A program made the translations under genes and the position numbers. Shown here piece by piece: positions 25,780 through 36,465 of a DNA stretch of 64,000 nt (position 1 is its first letter; each line of letters starts with the position of its first letter). The stretch is from positions 62,001-126,000 of the IMG/VR virus record IMGVR_UViG_3300009181_000033; one strand, given 5' to 3'. The notes under the pieces are model-generated. The model saw only the letters and a list, made by a program, of their open reading frames with translations. It was not told where the DNA came from and did no database searches.

Positions 25780-26050
25780 CAAATTCCAAAAAAAATTTCC
25801 GGGAAATTTTCGAGAATACAACTGACACCAAAAAAACCATCCCACGGAAAATAGCCCGCAAGGCAAAGCAAACGAATGGGAAAAAATCCCCGGGAATTTT
25901 CGAACACCCTTAGCCGCGGCGGTGCTGCAGAAAGCCCACATAGTTCGCATATGGCCGGGGGGCCCCGGGGCTAAAAGGGGCTGTTTTGGGGCTGTTTTTG
26001 GGGCCCACCTGGCTGCATTTAGGCTTATTTTGGCGCCTTTTTGAGGGGGG
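25780..26050. other. strand-skew switch site 1 (C/A-rich to G/T-rich); candidate terminus or origin
   Basis: Non-coding; repeated AAAA(T)..CCGGGAA(A)TTTTCGA; GC palindromes; motifs shared in inverted form with 49285-49523. Confidence 0.55.
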
Positions 26051-26597
26051 CTGGTGGGTTGTTGTGGGGGCTGGAGGAGGCTGGGGGTGGCTGGGGTGTA
26101 TACCATTCGATGTCATCTAGGTTATAGGTATCGAAGAGGGAGGGGGAGTGTGAGGGTAGGGGGATTGAGGATAGGTCGAGTTCGAAGTTGTCGTGCCAAA
26201 TTGCCATAGTTTCGTGGATGTTGTGTGGGGGTGAGGGGAGTGATTCTGGGGGTTGGGTGATTTTGAAGGACTGCATTCTGATAAGTAGGTGGAGATTCCT
26301 TTGTTTCAGCCGAAGATTTTGAAGTAGAGCCAGATGAAGGGTGAGGTGAAGAGGCCGAGGAGGATGATGGAGAGGATTGCGCAGCCTGGGGCTATGGATG
26401 TGGTGCCTTTGCCTTTGTTGGTGATGAGGTCTGTGGCTACGGCGGTTGCGAAGATCTTTCCTGTGTTGCTGGCTTTGAACATGGTGTTTCTCCTTTTTGT
26501 TTGGTTGTGTTTGGAGCGGGATGTCGGTAATGCTCCGACCTTTCGGGCTTGGAAAGCCCGCGCACATCTGTCTATACCAATCCCGCGAATGTGTGGG

Positions 26598-26670
26598 TGG
26601 GGCCGAACGGAATTGAACCGTTAACCTACCGGTTAAAAGCCGGCTGCTCTACCTGTTGAGCTACGGTCCC
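26598..26670 (-). tRNA. tRNA-Lys(TTT), A4-C69 mismatch, no encoded CCA
   Basis: Cloverleaf GGGACCG..CTTTTAA..GTTCAATT. Confidence 0.85.
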
Positions 26671-26764
26671 GGGTGTGTTACTTGGGATCCCCCATATGGA
26701 TCCTTTTCACTTATTCAATAATAAATACAATCTGCTGTTTCCTCGCACATGGGTTGAGGTAACA

Positions 26765-26839
26765 TGGCGACCTCACGGAGACTTGAACTCCGATATCGAC
26801 CTTGAAAGGGTCGAGTCCTGACCTTTAGACGATGAGGCC
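26765..26839 (-). tRNA. tRNA-Glu(TTC)
   Basis: Cloverleaf with CCA. Confidence 0.9.
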
Positions 26840-26869
26840 GTTGTGATTAATTGTCAAGTTAAGTTAGAT

Positions 26870-26960
26870 TGGCGGATTCTCAAGGATTCGAACCTTGGGT
26901 GGGCTATTAACCCACGGCGGTTTTCAAAACCGCTGCCTTAAACCTCTCGGCCAAGAATCC
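26870..26960 (-). tRNA. tRNA-Ser(TGA)
   Basis: Long variable arm, G73, CCA. Confidence 0.92.
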
Positions 26961-27100
26961 ATATGACTTACAGTGTTTCATTTGACTTTCTTAACTTAAT
27001 CTACCGAGTCTTAGTTTTACACCACCAGATTCACATTTTTTCATCCTCAAATCTTATTAGCTAAAAAAGTTAGACTAGCTGTCTAGGTCGTAATATATAT

Positions 27101-27883
27101 ATGATTATGGAACATAAAGATTTTCTGTGTGAGCATTGTGAGCGTGTCTGCAAGAATGCCATGTCGCTATCTCAACATCGTTTAAGATGTGAGAAGAATC
27201 CTGGGAATATTAAAGATAATTTCTATCTACCTTCTAGGAAGGGAAAATACAAGAAAGACAATCCTTCAGAGTTGACGTTGAAGAGGCGAGCTGCTCGAGC
27301 TAGAAAAGTCTTATTTGAGGAGAATGGCTCACTATCTTGCTTGTACTGTGAAAAACTCACCGAGGATTATTCATGTTTAACTGTACATGAATCAATGTGT
27401 CCAAAGAATCCCAACAGAGGAGACAGAAGCCTTAGTGAAGAGACTAAAAAGAAATTATCACTTATCACGAAGGGTAGAAAGATGTCAGATGAGTTTAAGA
27501 CAAAGATTAGTGAGGCAATGAAGCGAGCTATTCTTGAGCATCCTGAATCTTATACGTCATCCAACAGAGGAAGGGTAAAACAGATTATTGTCGATGGAGT
27601 TAAGCTTCATGGTTCATGGGAGGCAACTTTTTATTCCTGGGCAAAAGAAAATAATCTGAATCCTGAAAGGTGTTTGACTGGATTTGATTACTTCTGGAAT
27701 GGGAAGAACAGAAAGTATTTTCCGGATTTTTATCTTCCGAATCTTGATCTTTATGTCGAAGTGAAAGGATATGAGACCGAACAAGATAGAGAAAAATGGA
27801 GACAGTTTCCTGAGAAGATTATTGTTCTAAAAAAAGAAGAGATAAGAAGCATTCTGAAAGGATCTTATTCAATCCGATTTTAA
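27101..27883 (+). CDS. free-standing homing-type endonuclease: Zn-finger repeats, NUMOD3-like helices, PD-(D/E)xK domain
   Basis: CEHC..H..C, SEETKKKLS, YFPDFYLP...YVEVKG; antisense inside the tRNA cluster. Confidence 0.8.
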   Translation: MIMEHKDFLCEHCERVCKNAMSLSQHRLRCEKNPGNIKDNFYLPSRKGKYKKDNPSELTLKRRAARARKVLFEENGSLSCLYCEKLTEDYSCLTVHESMCPKNPNRGDRSLSEETKKKLSLITKGRKMSDEFKTKISEAMKRAILEHPESYTSSNRGRVKQIIVDGVKLHGSWEATFYSWAKENNLNPERCLTGFDYFWNGKNRKYFPDFYLPNLDLYVEVKGYETEQDREKWRQFPEKIIVLKKEEIRSILKGSYSIRF

Positions 27884-27889
27884 AGAGTT

Positions 27890-27967
27890 TGGTGGAACGG
27901 GTGGGACTCGAACCCACACATGTCCGGTTATGAGCCGGGTAATCTGAACCAATTGATTTACCGTTCC
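27890..27967 (-). tRNA. tRNA(CAT), Met or Ile2
   Basis: Cloverleaf, CTCATAA loop, AATC/GATT D-stem, CCA. Confidence 0.85.
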
Positions 27968-27978
27968 ATTTAGAGATT

Positions 27979-28056
27979 TGGTGGGACAGGAGGGACTCGA
28001 ACCCCCACATGTTCGCTTATGAGGCGACTAATCTGAACCTATTGATTTACTGTCCC
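27979..28056 (-). tRNA. tRNA(CAT), Met or Ile2, tandem paralogue
   Basis: Same D-arm as the neighbour with covarying stems, CCA. Confidence 0.85.
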
Positions 28057-28067
28057 ATTTTAGTATT

Positions 28068-28144
28068 TGGCACCCCCAGATGGATTCGAACCACCGACCG
28101 GTCGGGTAGAAACCGACAGCTCTAATCCGCTGAGCTATGGGGGC
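28068..28144 (-). tRNA. tRNA-Arg(TCT)
   Basis: Cloverleaf, CCA. Confidence 0.9.
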
Positions 28145-28169
28145 GTGTTGTGTTTTCTTTTGTGATTTT

Positions 28170-28254
28170 TGGTGGAAGGTGATGGATTCGAACCATCGAA
28201 GGCGGTGCCGGCAGATTTACAGTCTGCTCCCTTTAGCCACTCGGGAAACCTTCC
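28170..28254 (-). tRNA. tRNA-Tyr(GTA)
   Basis: Long variable arm, CCA. Confidence 0.92.
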
Positions 28255-28285
28255 TTGGAGACGTTACGTTGATTATCAAAGAACG

Positions 28286-28371
28286 TGGTACCAGGGACGG
28301 GACTCGAACCCGTACGACTGTGAGGTCCGCGGATTTTAAGTCCGCTGCGTATACCATTCCGCCACCCTGGC
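28286..28371 (-). tRNA. tRNA-Leu(TAA)
   Basis: Long variable arm, CCA. Confidence 0.92.
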
Positions 28372-28417
28372 AAGGTGAGGGACCTATTGTGACCGGGTCC
28401 CTGGGCGGTGTATTTAT

Positions 28418-28738
28418 TTACTTAGTTTTGGTCTTGGTCGCCGTTGGTGTCTTCTTGGTGGGTGTTGTCTTCTCGAGGAGGACTGGAACGACCTGTGCGT
28501 AGTAGGATGATGGGACGTCAGGTCGACGATGGTTGATGTTGGAGGCGCATGAGGCAGCCTTGGATCGTGAGTAGAAGATCTGGGCTTCGGCCTTGACAGA
28601 CCAGATTCCACGGAGTCGACCGGAGTATGCACGGCGGTTGAGGAACTTGCCTGCGTTTGCCTCCCGCACGATGTAGGCGGTGTAGTACTTGTCCATGTCG
28701 ATGTCTGAGGCGAACTGCTGCGTCTTGGTGTTATTCAT
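28418..28738 (-). CDS. hypothetical protein
   Basis: Promoter-like GTAAATC..TATAA upstream, hairpin downstream. Confidence 0.65.
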   Translation of the reverse strand: MNNTKTQQFASDIDMDKYYTAYIVREANAGKFLNRRAYSGRLRGIWSVKAEAQIFYSRSKAASCASNINHRRPDVPSSYYAQVVPVLLEKTTPTKKTPTATKTKTK

Positions 28739-28798
28739 GTTGTTTATATTATTCTTTCCTTGGCTGGATTTACAAACTATTTTTTGGGGTGGAATCTG

Positions 28799-29014
28799 TT
28801 AGGCTGCGAGGATTGTGGCGGTGTTGGAGGCGATGTGTTTGGCGTTGTCGTTGGTGGTGATGATGGCTTCTTGTGAGTTTGAGAAGAAGATGTTGTTGCG
28901 TGGGTCGATGATGGGGTCGATGTGGATGATGGGGAGGAAGGATCCTGAGGGAGTGAGGATGACTTGACCGATTTGGAGGGAGCTGACCTTGGTGGTTGTT
29001 GTGTTGTTGCTCAT
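28799..29014 (-). CDS. hypothetical protein (LQIGQVI)
   Basis: ORF track; KOW-like start. Confidence 0.55.
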   Translation of the reverse strand: MSNNTTTTKVSSLQIGQVILTPSGSFLPIIHIDPIIDPRNNIFFSNSQEAIITTNDNAKHIASNTATILAA

Positions 29015-29038
29015 GGTGGGTATAAGTATGTTGATTTT

Positions 29039-29112
29039 GAGCCACCTGTCGGAATCGAACCGACGACCTACGGGTTAAAAGCCCGCTGCTCTACCGACTG
29101 AGATACAGTCCC
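29039..29112 (-). pseudogene. chimeric tRNA: Lys(TTT) 5' half fused to the 3' half of a GCCACCT/AGGTGGC (Thr-type) tRNA
   Basis: Acceptor strands GGGACTG and AGGTGGC do not pair; AGGTGGC pairs with GCCACCT at 29774-29780. Confidence 0.8.
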
Positions 29113-29148
29113 ATGACGTCAATCTAAGCGAGGCGACCCCAGTGGGAA

Positions 29149-29232
29149 TGGAGCCTGAGGTCAGATTCGAACTGACGTGGGTTACCCGCCGCGTTACAAA
29201 TGCGGTCCAATCGACCTCTATGGGACTCAGGC
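29149..29232 (-). tRNA. tRNA-Thr(TGT) with atypical long variable arm
   Basis: GCCTGAG/CTCAGGC, TTTGTAA loop, GGGTAACCC extra arm, T73-CCA. Confidence 0.8.
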
Positions 29233-29703
29233 TTGATTCTTGAATTCTCTGTTACCTTTTCTTATTCGTGTTGATGTTTTTTCTTTTGATGATCTTCCCC
29301 AATTTCTAAAGTTAGGTGTTAGTGCGTGACAGTTAGGACATAATACTCTAAGATTTTCTTTTGTATTATTAGTATGATTACCGTCGATATGATCGATTTC
29401 TAGAATTGTCTGTCCATTATCTCGTGTCTTATTATAACCGCATTGAGAACAAGTATTATTCGCTTCTTGCAATAATCGTTCTCGTCGTTTACCGTAACCC
29501 AGCTTTTCAAAAGGAACCGAAGACCAATCAGTATAAGAATGTTGATTCTTTGCTTCTTTACCTCTTCTCGACTTCATTGCTTCGTAAAAAGCTTCTGTCT
29601 TGGGAGGAACAGCAATCCTATCAGGGTTTTCCTTACAGTGCCTTTCATGATATTTCAATCCTCTTTTTCCACATTCTCTTGAACAATATTTACATGTATC
29701 CAT
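29227..29703 (-). CDS. HNH homing endonuclease
   Basis: CSQCG, LEIDHIDGN..NN..ENLRVLCPNCH; stop codon lies inside tRNA-Thr. Confidence 0.9.
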   Translation of the reverse strand: MDTCKYCSRECGKRGLKYHERHCKENPDRIAVPPKTEAFYEAMKSRRGKEAKNQHSYTDWSSVPFEKLGYGKRRERLLQEANNTCSQCGYNKTRDNGQTILEIDHIDGNHTNNTKENLRVLCPNCHALTPNFRNWGRSSKEKTSTRIRKGNREFKNQA

Positions 29704-29747
29704 ATTACTAAGTATTAGTTACATGCAACCGTTGACCAAAAAAAGTG

Positions 29748-29780
29748 AAACCGTTGCTCTACCAGCTGAGCTAAGGTGGC
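29748..29780 (-). pseudogene. orphan tRNA 5' half (Thr-type), broken in the anticodon loop
   Basis: GCCACCTTAGCTCAGCTGGTAGAGCAACGGTTT followed by unrelated sequence. Confidence 0.8.
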
Positions 29781-29815
29781 GGGTTGTGGGCGGGTTGTTT
29801 CCGCCCGAGGTGTGT

Positions 29816-30520
29816 TTATCCGTTCATCGTCTTGGAGGGCTTGACGGTGTCGTCGCTCCTGGTGATGAGCTCAACATCGGAGGTGAAGAGGTAGATGGGC
29901 TTGCGGCCTTCGATCTCCACGTAGCATCTGATGCGCTGTGAGCTGTCGACGATGCCGGTGAGTCCGATGAAGCGAGGATCTCCGCCGATGATGCGGACGA
30001 GGTCGCCTTGTTCGATCCTGACGTTGCGAGATCGCTCGGTGGCGGCGACACGGTTGTGATGTTGGAGATGGAGTGAAATTGATGCGATGGTGGCTGCATC
30101 GAAGTTGGAGATGATGTCGCTGAAGATGACAGCGGCTTGGTCGTTGAGCTTCGGCAGCTTGGCGCCGGCCTTCTCGACCTTCTTCATGTGTGCCGGCTTC
30201 TTGTTGTCGTTGAGAGCCTGTAGCGCTGCCAGCTTCTCTGCCTTGGCTGCAGCTCGGGCGCCGCGCCGGTCGGCACGCTCTGCCTCGAGCTTGGAGAGCT
30301 TGTTGGCCTTGTTTGCCTCGCGGGTGGCCTTGCGCTCGGCCTTTGCCTCGTCGTCGGTGGATGGCGACTTCTTGCCCTTGGCAAGTTCGGCCTTGACAGG
30401 CTTTGCCATGGCAACGGCCGGCTCGGAGGAAGCGGATGCGTCCTTGGCAGCCTTGCGAGCCTTGGCAGCAGCGAGAGCCTTATCGATTGCGGAGAGCTTG
30501 GTCGTGTCAGTCATTTCCAT
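29816..30520 (-). CDS. Lys/Ala-rich protein with C-terminal KOW motif
   Basis: Histone-H1-like N-terminus; IEQGDLVRIIGGD..FIGLTGIV. Confidence 0.75.
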   Translation of the reverse strand: MEMTDTTKLSAIDKALAAAKARKAAKDASASSEPAVAMAKPVKAELAKGKKSPSTDDEAKAERKATREANKANKLSKLEAERADRRGARAAAKAEKLAALQALNDNKKPAHMKKVEKAGAKLPKLNDQAAVIFSDIISNFDAATIASISLHLQHHNRVAATERSRNVRIEQGDLVRIIGGDPRFIGLTGIVDSSQRIRCYVEIEGRKPIYLFTSDVELITRSDDTVKPSKTMNG

Positions 30521-30861
30521 ATTCCTTGTTGTTTGGTTGCCGTTACTTTCTTAATTTACTCTGTGGTTGCCGACTTTGCACCGACTATTTTTCGTTTGCG
30601 ATTTTAATTTCTTCCTCCGTTGGAGGGCGCAGTTTGAAGCTGGAGGAAGGAATGACGAAGATTCCGTCGTAGATGAGATCCCCTGCCATGTTGAGGCAAC
30701 CCCCGATGGTGTCGATGATGGGGAAGGTCTCGCCGATGTAGTGATTCACGTAGACTCGTTTATTGACGTCGAAGTATATCCAGTCTTTGGTGAGTACCGC
30801 CATCAGGCGAGGTGTCGTGTTGTTGAGTTTTGGATAGAGAGGCTTTTGCTTTTCTTCCATG

Positions 30862-31212
30862 TCAGTAGTGTCCTGGTCGAGTGGTGTGACCCGACCAGGC
30901 GGTACCGTCCCAGATGTATGCATGTTCTGTGCCAAAATCTGGCCAAGCTTCTCGAAGCATCTCGTCGAGGTTGTCGTAGAAGACGAATTCCTTGTCTTCC
31001 CCACGATCCCTGGCGTATGCCACGGTCTCGGCGAGGGTGTCACCCAAGGAGCTCAGGTTGCCGAGCTCCACGAGTTCTCGAGCTAGCTTGGATGAGTTGT
31101 AATGATTCGTGAGGGTTGCGCCTACTCCCTCAGGGCGGCCGTCGTAGTGACAGTAAACGCCCTCGATGGATCCGTTAGCGTGAATGATTCCGATGCATGA
31201 GCGAGTTGACAT
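30862..31212 (-). CDS. conserved-looking phage hypothetical protein
   Basis: MSTRS.IG...GVYCHYDG.PEGVG..L. Confidence 0.75.
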   Translation of the reverse strand: MSTRSCIGIIHANGSIEGVYCHYDGRPEGVGATLTNHYNSSKLARELVELGNLSSLGDTLAETVAYARDRGEDKEFVFYDNLDEMLREAWPDFGTEHAYIWDGTAWSGHTTRPGHY

Positions 31213-31221
31213 GTGTACCTT

Positions 31222-31452
31222 TCAGTGATTGGATGCGAGGGCGAGAGGTTGGACTTCGGTGCGTAGTCTCTGGACGGTGGAGAGGAAGCCGATGTAGGCT
31301 TCGTCGATGGCATCGATCTCCCTGAAGTCAGGGTCGGTGGCGTTCTCCTCCAGGACTTGCAGCTCTTTGATGCGATTCTTCATCTGTCTCAGCTCGAATT
31401 CGAGTGAGGTGAGGTGAGACATCTTCAGGGTGTAGAACAGCTGAGGAATCAT
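31222..31452 (-). CDS. hypothetical protein
   Basis: RBS AAAGGAA, GC3 codon pattern. Confidence 0.6.
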   Translation of the reverse strand: MIPQLFYTLKMSHLTSLEFELRQMKNRIKELQVLEENATDPDFREIDAIDEAYIGFLSTVQRLRTEVQPLALASNH

Positions 31453-31463
31453 TCTTTTTCCTT

Positions 31464-31721
31464 TCAGTAGGAAGCCTGGCGACAGATGACTGGCTTTTGG
31501 CTTGACGGCATTAGGAGCCTCTTCTTGTAGCCGTTTCCGACATTGATGCAGTTGAAGTAGAAGACTGCTTGAGCCAGATCACCACGGAACGAGTAGCGGG
31601 TTCGGTAGCTACCCTTGCTGTACCGGCCGACCTGCACGAGGAACTCGGTGGCGGAGGAGTATGCAATGTGCTTGCCGTTGAGTGTTGCGGTCTTGAGGTT
31701 CGTCTGCATTCCGTTCATCAT
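31464..31721 (-). CDS. hypothetical protein
   Basis: GTGCAAAGTCAAC promoter upstream. Confidence 0.7.
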   Translation of the reverse strand: MMNGMQTNLKTATLNGKHIAYSSATEFLVQVGRYSKGSYRTRYSFRGDLAQAVFYFNCINVGNGYKKRLLMPSSQKPVICRQASY

Positions 31722-31963
31722 GATCTTAATCTACCTTGAGGATTGTTGACTTTGCACTCAGTCGAGAGAGGCCTTCAGATTCGCGATGCCGATCTCGAAC
31801 GCCCGGATGTCGAGAGGATCCGTGGCGGTACGCAGGGACTCCGTCATGCTGTCGAGCAGCGTTCGACGGTATTCCACCGGCAGATTGGTGAGGTCGAGCT
31901 TCTTAACTTCGGATCGGTTGGCTTCCATGGTTCTACTCTATCAGGTTGAGGTGGAACTTTTCA

Positions 31964-32188
31964 CTACCTGCCCCATTGCTGAGGAATCGACTTTCGAAGA
32001 ATCTCGAGGATTCCGCCGAAGTTGCCCAAATCATCATCATCATCGAGATCATCTAGTGCGGCACGAATCCGCTTCGCCTCCTCGAGGGTCATGCACATGG
32101 AGACACAGTCAGACTTACCTGGCACACCTGGTACATACTTTGTGATGATCATGATCTCTTTGTACTCCTTCTCAGTTGAGCTTTTCAC
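31964..32188 (-). CDS. hypothetical protein
   Basis: ORF track; real start may be an internal Met after a GTGAAA promoter variant. Confidence 0.5.
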   Translation of the reverse strand: MKSSTEKEYKEIMIITKYVPGVPGKSDCVSMCMTLEEAKRIRAALDDLDDDDDLGNFGGILEILRKSIPQQWGR

Positions 32189-32535
32189 ACTCGGCCGATG
32201 GCGGAAAGGAACTGCTTCTTCGCCTCGGCGCCGAGGACCGCACCGACCATCACGTAGAGCGCCTCGCGGAAGGACGTGAACTTGGCGAGGGTCGCCGAGA
32301 ACTCCATGACGTGGTTACCGTGGATGGGGGAGATGTAGGAGGCGTTCCGTTTGACCGCGTCATTGATCTCATCGAGTGAGCGGACGAGGCGACATCCGAT
32401 ACTCTCAAGTTCCTCAGCGTGTCGATCGACCGTCGCGGCGATGGTCAGGAGGTCGCACTGTGTGAGGGTCCACTCCCTCTCGTTGGGGGAGATGAGGGTG
32501 AGAACAGCGTTCTCGAACTTATTGGTGTTGTTCAT
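32185..32535 (-). CDS. hypothetical protein
   Basis: GTGCAA promoter 36 nt upstream. Confidence 0.7.
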   Translation of the reverse strand: MNNTNKFENAVLTLISPNEREWTLTQCDLLTIAATVDRHAEELESIGCRLVRSLDEINDAVKRNASYISPIHGNHVMEFSATLAKFTSFREALYVMVGAVLGAEAKKQFLSAIGRV

Positions 32536-33049
32536 AGATTAGTTATACTTCAGCGAATGTTGACTTTGCACTCACATGCAGAAGAAGAGCACCACGGTGG
32601 CGTAGAAGCAAGCTAGTGTGAAGCACCCGACGATTCCGTACGCCACCGTCCGCACCGCGAACTGCGCGGGAGAGATGCGTTCACCACGGCTGTTCACCAT
32701 CAGTTCCTTCAGCTCGTCAACCATGAGACAAGTGTACTCCGCAGAATGTTGACCTTGCACCGCTCCAAAAATATTTTTTATTTTCTTCCCTCCCCAGGAC
32801 CCTCCGACAATCCCCGGACTGCATCCCCAGGCTGCCCAGGATGCCCTCAGAATAGTCTTTGCCACCAGGACGGGTTGACATCCATGCCGGCATTTGAAAA
32901 CACTCCTGAAGGCATCCTGGCGCAAGTATGTCAAAGAGCGGGATTAGAATGGTGTCAAATCTGACCCATGGGTCTATCTCGAATCAGCTTGTTTTCAAAT
33001 GCCGGGTATGACAATAAATGTCACATTGACATGTGCTTTTTTGTGTACT

Positions 33050-33277
33050 TTAGAGAGCAGATGGGACAGTGGGTCTAGGGGGTAGGATGACTTCCTCGTC
33101 GTCGATGATTGAGGTGTCGATGAGATCGTTCATGTCCTTAGCAGACCTCTTAAGGTAATACCTCCCGCCGTCAACCGAAATGGAACCACACTTGCAGGTG
33201 ACGAAGTCATGCACGCCTCTGCTCTCGATGTTGTCGCTGCACTTCCTGCATTGAGCTGAGTTTCTGAGGATGCCCAT
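33050..33277 (-). CDS. small Zn-ribbon phage protein
   Basis: RNSAQCRKC.D.IES..HDFVTCKCG.ISVDGG; start at MGILRN. Confidence 0.75.
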   Translation of the reverse strand: MGILRNSAQCRKCSDNIESRGVHDFVTCKCGSISVDGGRYYLKRSAKDMNDLIDTSIIDDEEVILPPRPTVPSAL

Positions 33278-33290
33278 GGTGTTAAGCCTT

Positions 33291-34607
33291 TCAGCGCCAG
33301 GCGCCGTTGATCTGCTTCGCGTTGTCCATCTGGACGAGGACGTCCGAGGTGTGGAAGTGCATCTTGCAACCCTTGCCAAGGACGTAGCCTCGGCGGATCC
33401 TCGAGGGACCAGGAGCTGCACACTCTCCGTCGGTCATGATGAGCAAGCCATCCCAGCGGCCACGGTTCTTCGGATCGTTGGCGAGCTGAGTGGGAGCATT
33501 GAAGTCGGTTCCGCCACCACGAACCCTCTTGGCAGGAATGTTTGCGCCCTTGCGCCAGGTGTAGACATCCTTGTTGAGAGCGATCGTGTCGAAGGGAACA
33601 ACGTCGATGGTGACGTTCTTGGTGAGGCTACCGAGTTCACCGAAGAATTCTGCCAGCATGTTGTTGCTGACCGATCCCGACTGATCGATGGCGACAAGGA
33701 TCTTGGCTACGTAGCCTTTCTTGACGCCTGGGTGGATGTAAGGGTAGCGCTTGTTGATTCGCTTGATCGAGGTGCTGCGGCCGCCCTTGACGAGGTTGCC
33801 GACGAACTGGCGAAGGACGTTCCGCCAATTGATCACGGTGGTGATCGACTTGCGGATGGCTTCAATCATGTCGGCCGACATGTTTCCCCAGCCATTGGCC
33901 TGGGCGTCGGCGTGCTTGGCTGCCTTCTCGACCATTGCCCTGACCTTGCCTTCAACGTATTCACGCTTCTCCTCCGGAATGCTGTCCCAGGCGTCATGGT
34001 CGTCCATCGAGACAATGATGTTGCCTTCCCCGGTGAGTTCTTCGGGAGTCATGCCTTGCTTCTCGGCTTCCTCCTTGATCTTTTCGAAGTACCATTCGGA
34101 AGACTGCATGGGTGGAAGCTTGGCGATGATCTCCGCCAGCTTCATGCCCTGCTTCTCGTCTGCCGTGAAGTCTCGGCCTTCGGGGTGCTTTGGGAAGACA
34201 CCGGGAACGAGTGCGAATTCGGGGAGGATGCGATCACCCGTGACGTGGGAGGAATATTGCTTATTTTCCTTGTCGAGGAGGATGGAGTTAATGGCAAGAT
34301 CGGTGGCGACGTTCCAAAGTTGGGGTGGTGTCTTGCGGCGTGCCTGGACGTGGCCGAACACGAGGTGATAGTATTCGTGATTGATGACACCACGGATCTC
34401 GCGTGGCGAGAGGGAACCGAAGAATTCCGGGTTCCAGTACATCACGATTTCGTCGTTCTTCTCATTGAAGGCGACCGCGGCTGTGGGGATCGATCGAGTC
34501 GGAGTCTTCTGGATATGTCTGCTGAGCTCTGCGAAGAAAGGAGAATCCTGCAGGAAAGAAATGAGATGCCTGTCAAGGTTGAAATCCGTCTCAGCTTGAG
34601 TGAACAT
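33291..34607 (-). CDS. DUF2201-type HExxH metallopeptidase + VWA domain protein
   Basis: INHEYYH, NVATDLAIN, MIDAS DQSGS, GGGT, TDG. Confidence 0.9.
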   Translation of the reverse strand: MFTQAETDFNLDRHLISFLQDSPFFAELSRHIQKTPTRSIPTAAVAFNEKNDEIVMYWNPEFFGSLSPREIRGVINHEYYHLVFGHVQARRKTPPQLWNVATDLAINSILLDKENKQYSSHVTGDRILPEFALVPGVFPKHPEGRDFTADEKQGMKLAEIIAKLPPMQSSEWYFEKIKEEAEKQGMTPEELTGEGNIIVSMDDHDAWDSIPEEKREYVEGKVRAMVEKAAKHADAQANGWGNMSADMIEAIRKSITTVINWRNVLRQFVGNLVKGGRSTSIKRINKRYPYIHPGVKKGYVAKILVAIDQSGSVSNNMLAEFFGELGSLTKNVTIDVVPFDTIALNKDVYTWRKGANIPAKRVRGGGTDFNAPTQLANDPKNRGRWDGLLIMTDGECAAPGPSRIRRGYVLGKGCKMHFHTSDVLVQMDNAKQINGAWR

Positions 34608-34686
34608 AAATTACCCTTATCACTGAAGGTGCGGACTTTGCACCGGTGGTCAAAACAATTTCTTTCCCACAAGATCCTATTTAAAT

Positions 34687-34956
34687 TCAGTCGAATCTCT
34701 TCACTGTCACAGTTGTCGTGGTGACGACTTCCTCGGTGCAAACTCTGAAGTTCTCCTTGGGAATGTCCCAGTAGAACCATCTGAGATTGCCGTTCGACAG
34801 GAGCTGAGTATTGCTATATTCCCCGAATATATACTCAGTTCCTGCCGGCACAACGGTGATGGTCTCTGACTGGAGATTATTATATGACCATTCCTTTGTG
34901 AGGATGGCCACCTTACGCGTATTTTTTGAGGTGGATGTTTCGCTCTTGCTGCCCAT
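34687..34956 (-). CDS. hypothetical protein
   Basis: ORF track; start approximate. Confidence 0.5.
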   Translation of the reverse strand: MGSKSETSTSKNTRKVAILTKEWSYNNLQSETITVVPAGTEYIFGEYSNTQLLSNGNLRWFYWDIPKENFRVCTEEVVTTTTVTVKRFD

Positions 34957-35113
34957 GGTGTACATCCTAAAATGCTGTTGAGCAATCTTACAACTATTTT
35001 TAGAAAATCATTTTAAGCAGATCATCTGCTCCCAGGAGGGAACATCAAAGCTACTGAGCCTATCACGATTGTGATCCAAAAAATGGAAACTATGATATCG
35101 CTCATGGCAGGTT

Positions 35114-35335
35114 TCAGATTGGATTCTTTTCGAGAGCCTCGAGTGTTGCTTCTGTGACCCGCTGTTCTCTTCTCTGGAGGAGCTCTAACCAGGATTCATC
35201 TGAACTGATCATTGCTTGGATCGTCTGGGTGACGGCGTCTGTGATCTGATCGTTAACTCCGTTGGGAAAAGACATGTGATTGAGCAGAAGCACGATGAGC
35301 TCTTCGTTGGTGTAACGTTTTGTGATGGACAACAT
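35114..35335 (-). CDS. hypothetical protein
   Basis: RBS AAAGGTG. Confidence 0.55.
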   Translation of the reverse strand: MLSITKRYTNEELIVLLLNHMSFPNGVNDQITDAVTQTIQAMISSDESWLELLQRREQRVTEATLEALEKNPI

Positions 35336-35553
35336 GTTTCACCTTTTCATGGCGCTGAGCTTGCCCAGTACCTTCTCCAAAGAGCCTTGTCGAACCTTTA
35401 AATCATTCTCTTCCTCAGAGTCCTCGAGGGTACTGTATAATCGAAGCTCAATCTCATCCAGCTTGTAACGGACGAGCGTGTGTAGGTGTGTGATGTCGAT
35501 ATTGTCTAGCATAGCCCAAGCATTTTAAGACATCTTTTTTCATTGTACAAATT

Positions 35554-35628
35554 TGGTGGATCCAGTGGGATTCGAACCTACAGCCTACGGGTTAAAAGCC
35601 CGCTGCACTACCGTTGTGCTATGGATCC
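35554..35628 (-). tRNA. tRNA-Lys(TTT)
   Basis: Complete cloverleaf with CCA. Confidence 0.92.
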
Positions 35629-35688
35629 AGAAAAGAAAAGAGAAGGAGGAGCATTAAGGAAGCTTGGGCTAGAAGAAAAGCTGAGAAA

Positions 35689-36465
35689 TCAAGAACATTG
35701 GATGATGCCTTTCTCATAGAGACCTCGGTTGTTGATACCAAGGACGTACGTCCTGCCTGACGTACCAAACCTATTTTTAGAAACTGTGAAGATTCTCTCA
35801 CCGTATGTCTCCGACTTCTTCTCAAGGTCCACGTAGACCTCACCTCTCACGTCGACGGCATGCAGGATTGTGTTCTTTCCTGCGAAGACGGCCGGTCCAT
35901 TGCCGTGGCTTTTTGTCACCTGACCGATGAAGATCACAACACCGAAGTTCTTCTTGGCCCAGTCGGTCAAAGCCTCGACCGAACGGACGGCCGTCATGGA
36001 ATTCGTGAGGGCACCGTTGTACTTGCCATCGTCCAGGGTCTGAAGCGAGTCCTGGAGGATGAACACCTGCTTGCCGGGGTTCGCCTTGCGGAGAGAATCG
36101 GCATGCTTCAGCAGGTCGCTGACCAAGGTGTCCTGTCCGACGACGAAGCCGTTGCGGAGACCGAGGCGCTCCACGACCATCTTGACCTGATAGAGGCTTT
36201 CCTCACCGGTATTGTAGAGACAGATGTGACCGGCTGAGGTGATGGCGTTGGCAAGCTGGAGGAGCAAGGTTGTCTTGCCGGCGCCAGGGGTGCCGGTGAG
36301 CATCATGACGGAGGAGGGCACGAAGCCGTCACCGCCGAGGGCGTCGTCGAACCAGGAGATGCCGACCTTCTTGCGATCGCGGAGAGCATCGGGGACCTGG
36401 ATGTCCATGATGTTCATGCCGCGCTTGAGACCACGAATTCCGACGTTCAGATTCATCTTCGACAT
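35689..36465 (-). CDS. RadA/Sms-like RecA-family ATPase (core only)
   Basis: GTPGAGKT, GEES, DSLQT, GQVTK, LHAVD and KNRFG signature; no Zn finger or Lon-like domain. Confidence 0.85.
   Translation of the reverse strand: MSKMNLNVGIRGLKRGMNIMDIQVPDALRDRKKVGISWFDDALGGDGFVPSSVMMLTGTPGAGKTTLLLQLANAITSAGHICLYNTGEESLYQVKMVVERLGLRNGFVVGQDTLVSDLLKHADSLRKANPGKQVFILQDSLQTLDDGKYNGALTNSMTAVRSVEALTDWAKKNFGVVIFIGQVTKSHGNGPAVFAGKNTILHAVDVRGEVYVDLEKKSETYGERIFTVSKNRFGTSGRTYVLGINNRGLYEKGIIQCS

What the first reader, a model, noticed from the sequence alone, without database searches (positions are those of the whole stretch)
29039..29780. tRNA split at its anticodon by an HNH cassette that brings a re-engineered replacement tRNA-Thr
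Seen: the 5' half GCCACCT...ACGGTTT (29780-29748) and the 3' half CCGTAGGTCGTCGGTTCGATTCCGACAGGTGGCT (~29073-29040) have perfectly complementary acceptor strands but lie ~675 bp apart. The interval holds an HNH gene whose stop codon is inside a complete tRNA-Thr(TGT) with a class-II-like long variable arm, plus a Lys 5' half. Established: tRNA-Thr is normally class I. Inference: a 'destroy and replace' homing element cuts the canonical tRNA gene and carries an immune, structurally divergent isoacceptor. An intron-like rejoining of the halves is a less likely alternative.
Basis: partly seen in the sequence, partly recalled or inferred. Interest (0 to 1): 0.75.

Follow-up and report, generated by a model that had tools for sequence, protein, structure and literature searches.

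The report
Homing-nuclease cassette splitting a phage tRNA gene
A selfish nuclease gene, with a spare threonine tRNA gene attached, has landed in the anticodon of a jumbo phage's own threonine tRNA gene; this extends a known habit of phage homing nucleases, and the same layout recurs in many other phages.

Summary
On the minus strand, nt 1-34 of a tRNA (29780-29747) and its 3' part (29074-29040) are separated by 669 bp. Two relatives of the phage carry an uninterrupted tRNA-Thr(CGU) at the same syntenic spot, so this is an insertion into the anticodon, after C34. The ancestral gene is Thr, but CGU rather than UGU.

The insert holds a short conserved leader, an AT-rich 158-aa HNH endonuclease gene, and an 84-nt tRNA-Thr(UGU) with a long variable arm that contains the HNH stop codon. 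It also holds a spacer and the 5' two-thirds of a tRNA-Lys(UUU).

The layout "tRNA 5' fragment, HNH, tRNA-Thr(UGU)" recurs in 17 of 19 close HNH relatives and in cultured Pseudomonas phage HPP-Temi. The break is always in the anticodon loop. At least four other loci also keep a matching 3' remnant.

The long-arm tRNA is not re-engineered by the cassette. It belongs to a covarying family found in at least 112 viral contigs, 111 of them without an HNH. In two bacterial genomes it is the only UGU tRNA found.

No intron core is present, and the two halves cannot be joined into a tRNA-Thr.

Best reading: a free-standing homing-endonuclease cassette, like T4 SegB and T5 F-Tfl, that disrupts one tRNA-Thr gene and supplies another. 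Cleavage by the HNH is inferred, not shown.

The parts
29747..29780 (-). 5' part (nt 1-34) of the disrupted tRNA-Thr(CGU) gene: acceptor strand GCCACCT, D arm, anticodon-stem strand ACGGT and loop TTC, ending at C34
   Evidence: Read directly. It aligns base for base with the intact tRNA-Thr(CGT) of L178 and L176 up to C34.
29704..29746 (-). Cassette leader: AC, a run of seven T (29744-29738), the conserved GGTCAACGGTT (29737-29727) and an A/T-rich stretch up to the ATG. It may be the cassette's own promoter.
   Evidence: The same motif follows the tRNA 5' fragment in L010, L012, L014 and L098, which come from different phage contexts. The generic sigma-70 scan did not call it, so a promoter role is inference.
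29227..29703 (-). HNH endonuclease gene, 158 aa, AT-rich (35.6% GC)
   Evidence: Pfam HNH scores 22.6 bits (cut-off 21.4) and PHROG HNH families reach E 1.9e-18. There are 860 homologues, and both Cys pairs, D104, H105, N117 and H126 are invariant. It is single-copy in the genome.
29149..29232 (-). Cargo tRNA-Thr(UGU), 84 nt including an encoded CCA. Class-II-like: 3-bp D stem and a 12-nt variable arm (GGG/CCC stem). The HNH stop codon lies in its acceptor stem.
   Evidence: ARAGORN; Rfam tRNA 44.2 bits. In the family alignment A2, 97.8% of cells are paired and 15 of 20 pairs show compensatory changes. G1-C72, C2-G71, the UGU anticodon and discriminator U are conserved.
29113..29148 (-). 36-nt spacer of unknown origin inside the insert
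   Evidence: No match outside copies of this same phage among all loci fetched.
29075..29112 (-). tRNA-Lys(UUU)-like 5' fragment (acceptor strand GGGACTG, D arm, anticodon stem GCGGG, loop CTTTTAA), fused to the Thr 3' part. It is a pseudogene, because the acceptor strands do not match.
   Evidence: Rfam gives only a partial tRNA hit (model positions 8-63) and ARAGORN does not call it. Its anticodon arm is identical to that of the phage's own tRNA-Lys at 35554-35628 (alignment).
29040..29074 (-). 3' part of the disrupted tRNA-Thr: stem strand (C)CCGT, variable loop AGGTC, T arm, acceptor strand AGGTGGC and discriminator T. The exact right-hand junction is ambiguous within TAA(C/A)CCGTAGGTC.
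   Evidence: The last 30 nt are identical to the 3' end of the intact tRNA-Thr(CGT) in L178. The same 28 nt occur in intact tRNA-Thr genes in L006 and L007.
29787..29807 (-). Hairpin GGGCGG...CCGCCC after the upstream 234-aa gene. It is a syntenic landmark that fixes the position of the tRNA site.
   Evidence: Conserved in the same place in L176 and L178. Listed as terminator-like.

Best explanation
A free-standing HNH homing-endonuclease cassette has been copied into the anticodon loop of the phage's tRNA-Thr(CGU) gene.

Shown: relatives of this phage have an intact 74-75-nt tRNA-Thr(CGU) between the same two protein genes. In the window, G35-U36 of that gene are replaced by 669 bp. The insert holds a short conserved leader, the HNH gene, a tRNA-Thr(UGU) that overlaps the HNH stop codon, a spacer and a partial tRNA-Lys.

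Inferred mechanism: during co-infection the HNH cuts or nicks the intact tRNA-Thr gene of a cassette-free genome near the anticodon. The break is repaired from the cassette-bearing genome.
- The left crossover falls in the conserved tRNA 5' half, which travels with the cassette.
- The right crossover here fell in a 12-of-13-nt match between the donor's downstream tRNA-Lys anticodon arm and the recipient's Thr anticodon arm. This left the recipient's 3' half as a scar fused to the Lys fragment.

The occupied allele is immune because the target is split by the insert. Loss of the ACG-only tRNA is covered by the cargo tRNA-Thr(UGU). That tRNA reads ACA, the phage's commonest Thr codon, and probably ACG by wobble. 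The cassette therefore costs the phage little and may help it.

The cargo is an ordinary member of a widespread class-II-like tRNA-Thr(UGU) family and was not modified for this role.
For: Insertion and empty site:
- L178 and L176/L177 carry homologues of the flanking 234-aa gene (80% and 71% identical). Both have an intact tRNA-Thr(CGT) at the same spot.
- The three-way alignment shows one clean gap of about 669 bp, with homologous flanks on both sides.
- A contig in run X2 joins 29077 to 29747 with one letter between, which is the form expected for an empty site.

Nuclease: HNH motif and family matches. The ORF is 35.6% GC, against 42.9% for the genome and about 55-60% for the immediate flanks.

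Recurrence:
- Of 99 unique HNH relatives, 57 have a same-strand tRNA starting within -95 to +30 nt of the stop codon, and 33 of those are Thr(tgt).
- 17 of 19 short Thr-linked relatives have an orphan tRNA 5' fragment less than 130 nt upstream. It is always broken in the anticodon loop.
- Matching 5' and 3' remnants with different acceptor sequences flank the module in L014, L020, L102 and L123.
- Cultured Pseudomonas phage HPP-Temi shows the same layout with a distant HNH.

The cargo is a real tRNA: covariation and conserved Thr identity elements. In L014 the stop codon changes from TGA to TAA, and the matching base in the 3' acceptor strand changes with it.

Codon use in long ORFs: ACA 1566, ACG 675.

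Precedent: T4 SegB is a free-standing endonuclease in a tRNA cluster. It cuts tRNA genes of relatives that lack it and drives inheritance of the T4 tRNA region. The T5 F-Tfl endonuclease ORFs also lie in a tRNA cluster (PMC2330249).
Against: - No cleavage assay exists. The target of this HNH is inferred only from where it sits.
- No donor with the arrangement "cassette followed by an intact tRNA-Lys" was found.
- The 5' tRNA fragment travels with the cassette even where no tRNA-Thr was obviously present before (L103, L105, L106). Some moves may therefore be ectopic recombination rather than true homing.
- Close HNH relatives carry class-I and class-II cargo in an interleaved pattern. The tRNA and the HNH therefore recombine often and are not a fixed unit.
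- L105 and L019 keep an intact tRNA-Thr(CGT) next to the HNH. Either those copies are immune variants or CGT genes are not the target.
- The promoter role of the leader was not supported by the generic scan.
Confidence: 0.7

Rival explanations
1. Recombination scar without site-specific homing. tRNA genes are short conserved repeats at which phage genomes recombine. The HNH-tRNA segment was swapped in by ordinary or micro-homology recombination between tRNA genes. The HNH is then a passenger, or a non-specific promoter of recombination, and not an enzyme aimed at tRNA-Thr.
For: - Both junctions lie in sequences shared by many tRNAs: the D arm and anticodon stem on the left, TAA(C/A)CCGTAGGTC on the right.
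- Cargo type changes often among close HNHs.
- 5' fragments of variable extent, some starting only at GGTAGAGC, occur where no full tRNA half exists (L103, L105, L106).
- Nuclease genes are known to mark the boundaries of genetic exchange between phages (PMC10448857, abstract seen).
Against: - The break is in the anticodon loop (nt 32-35) in every one of 17 loci, and also in HPP-Temi with a very distant HNH. Random recombination between tRNAs would be expected to scatter the breakpoints.
- One HNH clade is linked specifically to tRNA-Thr (33 of the 57 HNHs with an adjacent tRNA).
Confidence: 0.2
2. An intron: the 669 nt are spliced out of the transcript and the two halves are rejoined into a working tRNA.
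For: - The insertion is in the anticodon loop, the classic site of bacterial tRNA group I introns.
- The sister clade of this HNH family sits inside what look, by their exon junctions and shared internal sequence motifs, like group I introns of tRNA-Leu(UAA) in L048, L070 and L093. Rfam did not call an intron in these loci.
- The acceptor strands of the two halves are complementary.
Against: - Rfam finds no group I or group II intron in 26000-36000 or in related loci. This is a weak negative, because Rfam also missed the likely introns in L048, L070 and L093.
- The non-coding sequence is fully accounted for by a 43-nt leader, a complete tRNA, a 36-nt spacer and a tRNA-Lys fragment, which leaves no room for a ribozyme core.
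- G35 and U36 are absent. The base before the 3' part belongs to a Lys loop (TTTTAA) and nt 39 is C rather than A, so joining cannot restore tRNA-Thr.
- L014 keeps only the T arm and acceptor strand. L010, L012 and L098 have no 3' half at all.
Confidence: 0.03
3. A split tRNA assembled in trans from two separately transcribed halves, as in Nanoarchaeum.
For: Complementary acceptor strands, and recurrence of matching halves in several loci.
Against: - The sequence after the 5' half (ACTTTTTTTGG...) and the sequence before the 3' half (...GGGCTTTTAA) are not complementary, so no bulge-helix-bulge junction can form.
- The 3' half lacks the anticodon bases.
- Many loci lack any 3' half.
- No archaeal-type splicing endonuclease is expected in a bacterial phage system (general knowledge).
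Confidence: 0.01

Closest known systems
T4 SegB, a free-standing GIY-YIG homing endonuclease in the T4 tRNA gene cluster (PMC2330249; PMC13096335)
   Same: It is a stand-alone endonuclease gene among phage tRNA genes. It cuts inside tRNA genes of relatives that lack it, and it drives preferential inheritance of the neighbouring tRNA region, including isoacceptor differences. An association between segB and tRNA genes across phages has been documented.
   Different: SegB belongs to a different nuclease family (GIY-YIG rather than HNH). SegB lies between tRNA genes, whereas this cassette sits inside a tRNA gene and leaves both halves. Here the ORF's stop codon is embedded in a co-travelling tRNA. 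Cleavage by this HNH is untested.
[quoted passage not shown] 2004, as cited in PMC2330249)
   Same: They are endonuclease ORFs inside a phage tRNA cluster. The broader HNH family found here often abuts tRNA genes of many identities.
   Different: No sequence comparison with the T5 enzymes was made here. To my knowledge no split tRNA or tRNA cargo has been described for them.
Group I introns with HNH ORFs in tRNA anticodon loops, for example tRNA-Leu(UAA)
   Same: Same insertion site (the anticodon loop) and a related HNH clade. L048, L070 and L093 appear to be such introns, judged by exon junctions and shared internal sequence motifs.
   Different: There is no ribozyme core and no restorable exons in the window. 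Function is kept by supplying a second tRNA gene rather than by splicing.
Phage-encoded tRNA-Thr(UGU) genes that rescue cells from the P2 OLD nuclease (PMC12445682)
   Same: They are phage-borne tRNA-Thr(UGU) genes that replace a host tRNA destroyed by a defence nuclease. Resistance there comes partly from a shortened anticodon stem. The window's cargo has an A-C mismatch at the last pair of the anticodon stem (pair 31-39), next to the loop.
   Different: Whether the class-II-like cargo resists any nuclease is unknown. Nothing in what I read of that paper (abstract and one Results section) mentions a long variable arm or a link to homing endonucleases.

Membership tests
Free-standing HNH homing endonuclease gene (HEG) | HNH (beta-beta-alpha-metal) nuclease motif | tested here: met
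   Pfam HNH 22.6 bits, above the 21.4 cut-off. PHROG HNH families reach E 1.9e-18. Both CxxC pairs, D104, H105, N117 and H126 are invariant in 32 homologues. The only solved relative is weak: McrA, E 0.0057.
Free-standing HNH homing endonuclease gene (HEG) | Presence/absence polymorphism at an otherwise syntenic site (an empty site in relatives) | tested here: met
   L178 and L176/L177 have an intact tRNA-Thr(CGT) between the same flanking genes. The alignment shows a single 669-bp gap.
Free-standing HNH homing endonuclease gene (HEG) | Not embedded in a self-splicing intron or an intein | tested here: met
   No intron family hit. The non-coding parts are fully accounted for by a leader, a tRNA, a spacer and a tRNA fragment.
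Free-standing HNH homing endonuclease gene (HEG) | Site-specific cleavage of the HEG-less allele and HEG-dependent over-inheritance | not testable with these tools
   This needs a purified enzyme and phage crosses. The only support here is indirect: the break is at nt 32-35 of a tRNA in 17 of 19 related loci.
Free-standing HNH homing endonuclease gene (HEG) | Co-conversion of flanking markers | tested here: inconclusive
   The window's 5' part carries the stem strand ACGGT, as do the fragments next to related cassettes in L012 and L098, whereas L178 has GTTGC. However, L176 has CCGGT/ACCGT, so ACGGT could be native to this phage.
Group I intron in a tRNA anticodon loop | Ribozyme core (P3-P9), and exons that ligate into a functional tRNA | tested here: not met
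   No Rfam hit. There is no spare sequence for a core. G35-U36 are missing and nt 39 is of the Lys type. Relatives have a truncated 3' half or none.
tRNA-Thr (cargo gene 29232-29149) | Cloverleaf supported by covariation | tested here: met
   In alignment A2 (16 sequences), 97.8% of cells are paired and 15 of 20 pairs have changes on both sides. None of 500 shuffles reached this, and slid controls gave 33-52% paired.
tRNA-Thr (cargo gene 29232-29149) | ThrRS identity elements known from E. coli: G1-C72, C2-G71, G35 and U36. The role of G1:C72 is also used in bioRxiv 10.64898/2026.05.03.722492. | tested here: met
   G1, C2, G71, C72 and TGT are invariant in A2. 125 of 129 long-arm genes start with GC. 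The discriminator is U in 76 of 83, which excludes the G73 of Ser and the A73 of Leu and Tyr.
tRNA-Thr (cargo gene 29232-29149) | Actual charging with threonine and use in translation | not testable with these tools
   Indirect support only: in two bacterial genomes the long-arm gene is the only tRNA with a UGU loop that was found, among 47 and 46 tRNA hits.
Class II (long variable arm) tRNA architecture | Variable region of more than 10 nt that forms a stem, and a 3-bp D stem | tested here: met
   The window tRNA has a 12-nt variable region with a GGG/CCC stem and a 3-bp D stem. Across the family the variable region is 10-24 nt (mode 15), and 59 of 83 fold into a hairpin of at least 3 bp.
Trans-spliced split tRNA (Nanoarchaeum type) | Complementary leader and trailer that form a bulge-helix-bulge junction | tested here: not met
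   The sequences next to the two halves are not complementary.

The most novel reading that the evidence does not exclude
HNH-plus-tRNA-Thr(UGU) cassettes form a distinct class of selfish element that spreads by destroying the resident tRNA-Thr gene at its anticodon and paying for the damage with its own tRNA. In this reading the cargo is an anti-defence tRNA, because host tRNA-Thr(UGU) is a known target of OLD-type nucleases. Its class-II-like architecture would then represent a fourth long-arm tRNA family, beside Leu, Ser and Tyr. That family is common in phages and has replaced the chromosomal tRNA-Thr(UGU) gene in a few bacterial lineages, and I found no description of it in the papers searched.
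Probability: 0.3. Interest if true: 0.75.

Novelty: new variant of a known kind. Interest (0 to 1): 0.55.

Why it matters
Homing endonucleases in phage tRNA clusters are known (SegB in T4, F-Tfl in T5). This case adds a clear anatomy for how such an element can sit inside an essential-type RNA gene without an intron. It breaks the gene and carries a substitute whose first bases overlap its own stop codon.

The layout recurs across many uncultured phages and in a cultured Pseudomonas jumbo phage, so it can be tested at the bench.

The work also shows that tRNA-Thr(UGU) with a long variable arm is a common, structurally constrained phage tRNA, and occasionally a chromosomal one. This runs against the usual statement that only Leu, Ser and Tyr tRNAs are class II in bacteria (PMC9976931).

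It may also bear on the contest between phage tRNAs and host tRNA nucleases (PMC12445682, PMC13096335).

Tried and rejected
- A megablast of the region against cultured phages found nothing.
- Exact-pattern scans for the 5' half, the Lys fragment and the cargo tRNA found only copies of the same phage, L005.
- The search for related loci with the flanking 234-aa protein found only the same phage. The empty sites came instead from the large protein search followed by contig look-ups.
- L179, a 70%-identical relative of the flank gene, has a tRNA-Arg(cct) at the site and says nothing about Thr.
- Rfam E-value scans found no intron. They also missed the likely group I introns in L048, L070 and L093, so I treat this as weak evidence.
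- The generic promoter scan did not call the conserved leader.
- My orphan-half script wrongly flagged L106 as split. Rfam shows an intact tRNA there, with an extra 3' remnant downstream.
- No RNA run holds the sequence, only DNA metagenomes, so splicing could not be tested with reads. Most "joints" in the read laying at 85% likeness are tRNA-Thr(UGU) genes of other organisms and not empty sites.
- No donor was found for the spacer plus Lys fragment.
- BLAST of long-arm tRNAs against cultured phages is insensitive and gave only four records.
- A strict pattern survey found the long-arm tRNA in only 2 of 61 and 1 of 61 bacterial genomes of two groups. It is therefore sporadic in bacteria and not a trait of whole phyla.
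- I judged structure prediction and complex prediction unnecessary and did not run them.
Full report
**What the window is.** The window is bases 62001-126000 of a 297,894-bp phage genome with direct terminal repeats. It comes from freshwater metagenomes. The genome has 14 tRNA genes by ARAGORN. Most lie in a minus-strand cluster at window 26512-29232, and the only tRNA-Thr called is the long one at 29232-29149.

**The observation.** Read on the minus strand, the region holds, in order:
- 29780-29747: nt 1-34 of a tRNA, namely GCCACCT, the D arm, ACGGT and TTC.
- 29746-29704: a 43-nt leader with a run of seven T and the motif GGTCAACGGTT.
- 29703-29227: a 158-aa ORF.
- 29232-29149: an 84-nt tRNA-Thr(tgt) (ARAGORN; Rfam 44.2 bits). 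Its nt 4-6 are the ORF's TGA stop codon.
- 29148-29113: a 36-nt spacer.
- 29112-29075: the 5' two-thirds of a tRNA-Lys(UUU).
- 29074-29040: fused directly to the Lys fragment, CCCGT, AGGTC, a T arm, AGGTGGC and a discriminator T.

The ORF is an HNH endonuclease (Pfam above its cut-off, PHROG E 1.9e-18). It is AT-rich, 35.6% GC against roughly 55-60% in the flanks. Independent assemblies and Logan contigs carry the same junctions with no differences.

**Empty sites.** The gene just upstream (29816-30520, 234 aa) has homologues at 80% identity (L178) and 71% identity (L176/L177). In those contigs the same hairpin, GGGCGG...CCGCCC, is followed by an intact tRNA-Thr(CGT) of 74-75 nt. After that comes the homologue of the 71-aa gene that follows the split tRNA in the window.
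- The first 26 and last 30 nt of the L178 tRNA are identical to the window's two pieces.
- The three-way alignment shows a single gap of about 669 bp. It begins right after TTC (C34) and ends before AA-CCGT.
The element replaced G35-U36 of the anticodon.
- Two other intact tRNA-Thr genes, with CGT and TGT anticodons, share the same acceptor and the same 3' 28 nt (L006, L007).
- A contig in run X2 joins 29077 to 29747 with one letter between. That is what an intact CGT gene would give.

**The module recurs.** The HNH has 860 homologues, the closest at 74-81% identity. Contigs encoding them show the same order in unrelated neighbourhoods. A tRNA 5' fragment comes first (GCCxCxT TA GCTCAG..GGTAGAGC plus one stem strand), then the T-run/GGTC motif, then the HNH, then a tRNA-Thr(tgt) at or overlapping the stop codon (L010, L012, L014, L098).

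I collected 160 loci from IMG/VR and JGI metagenomes, which gave 99 unique HNH ORFs with enough downstream sequence.
- 57 have a same-strand tRNA starting within -95 to +30 nt of the stop codon, and 33 of these are Thr(tgt).
- Among the 19 short (135-175 aa) Thr-linked HNHs, 17 have an orphan tRNA 5' fragment within 130 nt upstream.
- In all of them, similarity to a tRNA ends in the anticodon loop, at nt 32-35.
- Matching 5' and 3' remnants with different acceptor sequences flank the module in L014 (GCCACCT), L123 (GCCACCG), L102 (GCCTCTC, with one G-U pair) and L020 (GCCTCCG).
- In L014 only the T arm and acceptor strand survive. In L010, L012 and L098 nothing survives on the 3' side.
- In L121 and L127 the victim and cargo types appear swapped: a class-II-like or L010-type 5' fragment lies upstream and the other kind lies downstream.
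- Cultured Pseudomonas phage HPP-Temi (Pawinskivirus, PP968062.1) has a Thr-like 5' half running straight into the ATG of a 135-aa HNH. That HNH overlaps an 87-nt tRNA-Thr by 15 nt, although it matches the window's enzyme only in the HNH motif.

**The cargo tRNA.** Sixteen long-arm tRNA(UGU) genes from these loci align to a cloverleaf. 97.8% of cells are paired and 15 of 20 pairs show changes on both sides. None of 500 shuffles reached this, and slid controls gave 33-52% paired.
- G1-C72, C2-G71, the YTTGTAA loop and a U discriminator are conserved.
- Between the window and L014, the HNH stop codon changes from TGA to TAA, and the 3' acceptor strand changes in step.
- The D arm (3-bp stem, AGnGGTCGA loop) and the 10-24-nt variable region are class-II-like, and the variable region usually forms a hairpin.

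This tRNA is not peculiar to the cassette. A pattern scan found at least 112 IMG/VR loci where ARAGORN calls an 80-92-nt tRNA-Thr(tgt), and 111 of them have no HNH upstream.

The same scan of bacterial genomes gave 17 such genes.
- Five of them (L300, L315, L324, L358, L397), at least four on contigs labelled as Eremiobacterota lineages, lie near tRNA-Tyr and tRNA-Gly. In three of the five a tRNA-Thr(GGU) is also nearby, an arrangement like that of E. coli thrU-tyrU-glyT-thrT.
- In two genomes, with 47 and 46 tRNA hits, the long-arm gene is the only tRNA with a UGU loop found by the pattern used.
- A strict pattern found the gene in only 2 of 61 and 1 of 61 genomes of those two groups, so it is sporadic in bacteria.
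- The tRNA identity review lists only Leu, Ser and Tyr as long-arm tRNAs (PMC9976931), and I found no paper describing a long-arm tRNA-Thr.

On the HNH tree, the window's well-supported clade of eight holds four class-I and four class-II cargo genes in an interleaved pattern. Cargo and nuclease therefore recombine often.

**Mechanism.** The insertion, its content and its recurrence are shown. The following steps are inferred.
- The HNH cuts the intact tRNA-Thr gene near the anticodon in a cassette-free genome.
- Repair copies the cassette from the occupied genome.
- The left exchange happens in the conserved 5' half, which travels with the cassette.
- In the window, the right exchange used the near-identity between a donor tRNA-Lys anticodon arm (TAACCCGTAGGTC) and the recipient's Thr arm (TAAACCGTAGGTC). 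This explains the Lys-5'/Thr-3' chimera.
- The split target makes the occupied allele immune.

The phage lost an ACG-only tRNA and gained one that reads ACA. ACA is its commonest Thr codon, with 1566 ACA against 675 ACG in long ORFs.

This matches the behaviour of T4 SegB, a free-standing endonuclease in the tRNA cluster. SegB cuts tRNA genes of relatives and drives inheritance of its region. The T5 F-Tfl endonuclease ORFs also lie in a tRNA cluster (PMC2330249; PMC13096335).

A possible extra benefit is speculative. Host tRNA-Thr(UGU) is destroyed by the P2 OLD nuclease, and phage tRNA-Thr genes rescue this, partly through a shorter anticodon stem (PMC12445682). The window's cargo has an A-C mismatch at the last pair of its anticodon stem, next to the loop.

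**Rivals.**
- An intron is unlikely. There is no ribozyme hit and no spare sequence for a core. G35-U36 are missing, nt 39 is of the Lys type, and relatives have truncated 3' halves or none. The HNH sister clade does sit inside what look like group I introns of tRNA-Leu(UAA) (L048, L070, L093). The family therefore appears to use anticodon loops in both ways.
- A trans-assembled split tRNA is excluded, because the junction sequences are not complementary.
- The serious rival is plain recombination between tRNA genes, with the HNH as a passenger. The constant breakpoint and the specific link to Thr argue against it, but only a cleavage assay can settle the matter.

**Verdict.** The element is a new variant of a known kind: a free-standing homing endonuclease of phage tRNA clusters. 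Here it is lodged inside a tRNA gene and coupled to a replacement tRNA. The long-arm tRNA-Thr(UGU) family is a separate side finding that deserves its own follow-up.

Noticed in passing
window 29149-29232; L180-L298 (IMG/VR); L300, L315, L324, L341, L358, L397 (bacterial contigs): tRNA-Thr(UGU) with a class-II-like D arm and a 10-24-nt variable arm is a large natural family. At least 112 viral loci carry it, mostly without any HNH. In some Eremiobacterota and a Spirosomataceae genome it is chromosomal and the only UGU tRNA found. I found no description of it in the papers searched.
   Followed up: partly
window 27101-27883 (+): A second AT-rich endonuclease ORF (260 aa; PHROG endonuclease E 2e-24, NUMOD3 motif, weak PD-(D/E)xK-like matches). 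It lies on the opposite strand between tRNA-Ser and the two tRNA-Met genes, and is probably another homing element in the same tRNA cluster.
   Followed up: partly
L123, L128, L105, L016, L103, L136, L115: about 60-20 nt upstream of the HNH ATG; degenerate form at window 29727-29760: The D-arm strand (G)TAGAGCA of the orphan 5' fragment is followed 15-20 nt later by its reverse complement, TGCTCTA(C), just before a TATAAT-like box. This conserved inverted repeat could be a hairpin, a protein-binding site or part of a promoter.
   Followed up: no
L048 about 974-1850; L070 about 969-1830; L093 about 988-1850: Distant members of the HNH family sit inside what look like classic group I introns of tRNA-Leu(UAA) (exon junctions GGACTT | ... 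| AAAATCC). Rfam's intron model did not report them at E<=1.
   Followed up: partly
L374 (Rhodobacteraceae MAG contig DNSZ01000180.1), a 90-nt tRNA: A long-arm tRNA with a Ser-like acceptor (GGAGGCG...), a G discriminator and a UGU anticodon. If SerRS charges it, it would insert Ser at ACA codons.
   Followed up: no
L012 3555-3642; L101: ARAGORN calls a tRNA-Ser with anticodon AGA (A34) right after the cassette. A34 is unusual for bacterial-type tRNA-Ser.
   Followed up: no
L070 1830-2421: A full-length ROOL RNA (Rfam 263 bits) lies next to the tRNA cluster of a phage contig.
   Followed up: no
L007 2653-3146; L093 512-591: tmRNA-like genes inside phage tRNA clusters: an ARAGORN permuted tmRNA call in L007, and a sub-threshold Rfam tmRNA hit in L093.
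   Followed up: no
window 27890-27967 and 27979-28056: Two tandem tRNA-Met(CAT) genes, 78 nt each, directly after the second endonuclease ORF. I did not check whether they are an initiator, an elongator or an Ile2-type tRNA.
   Followed up: no
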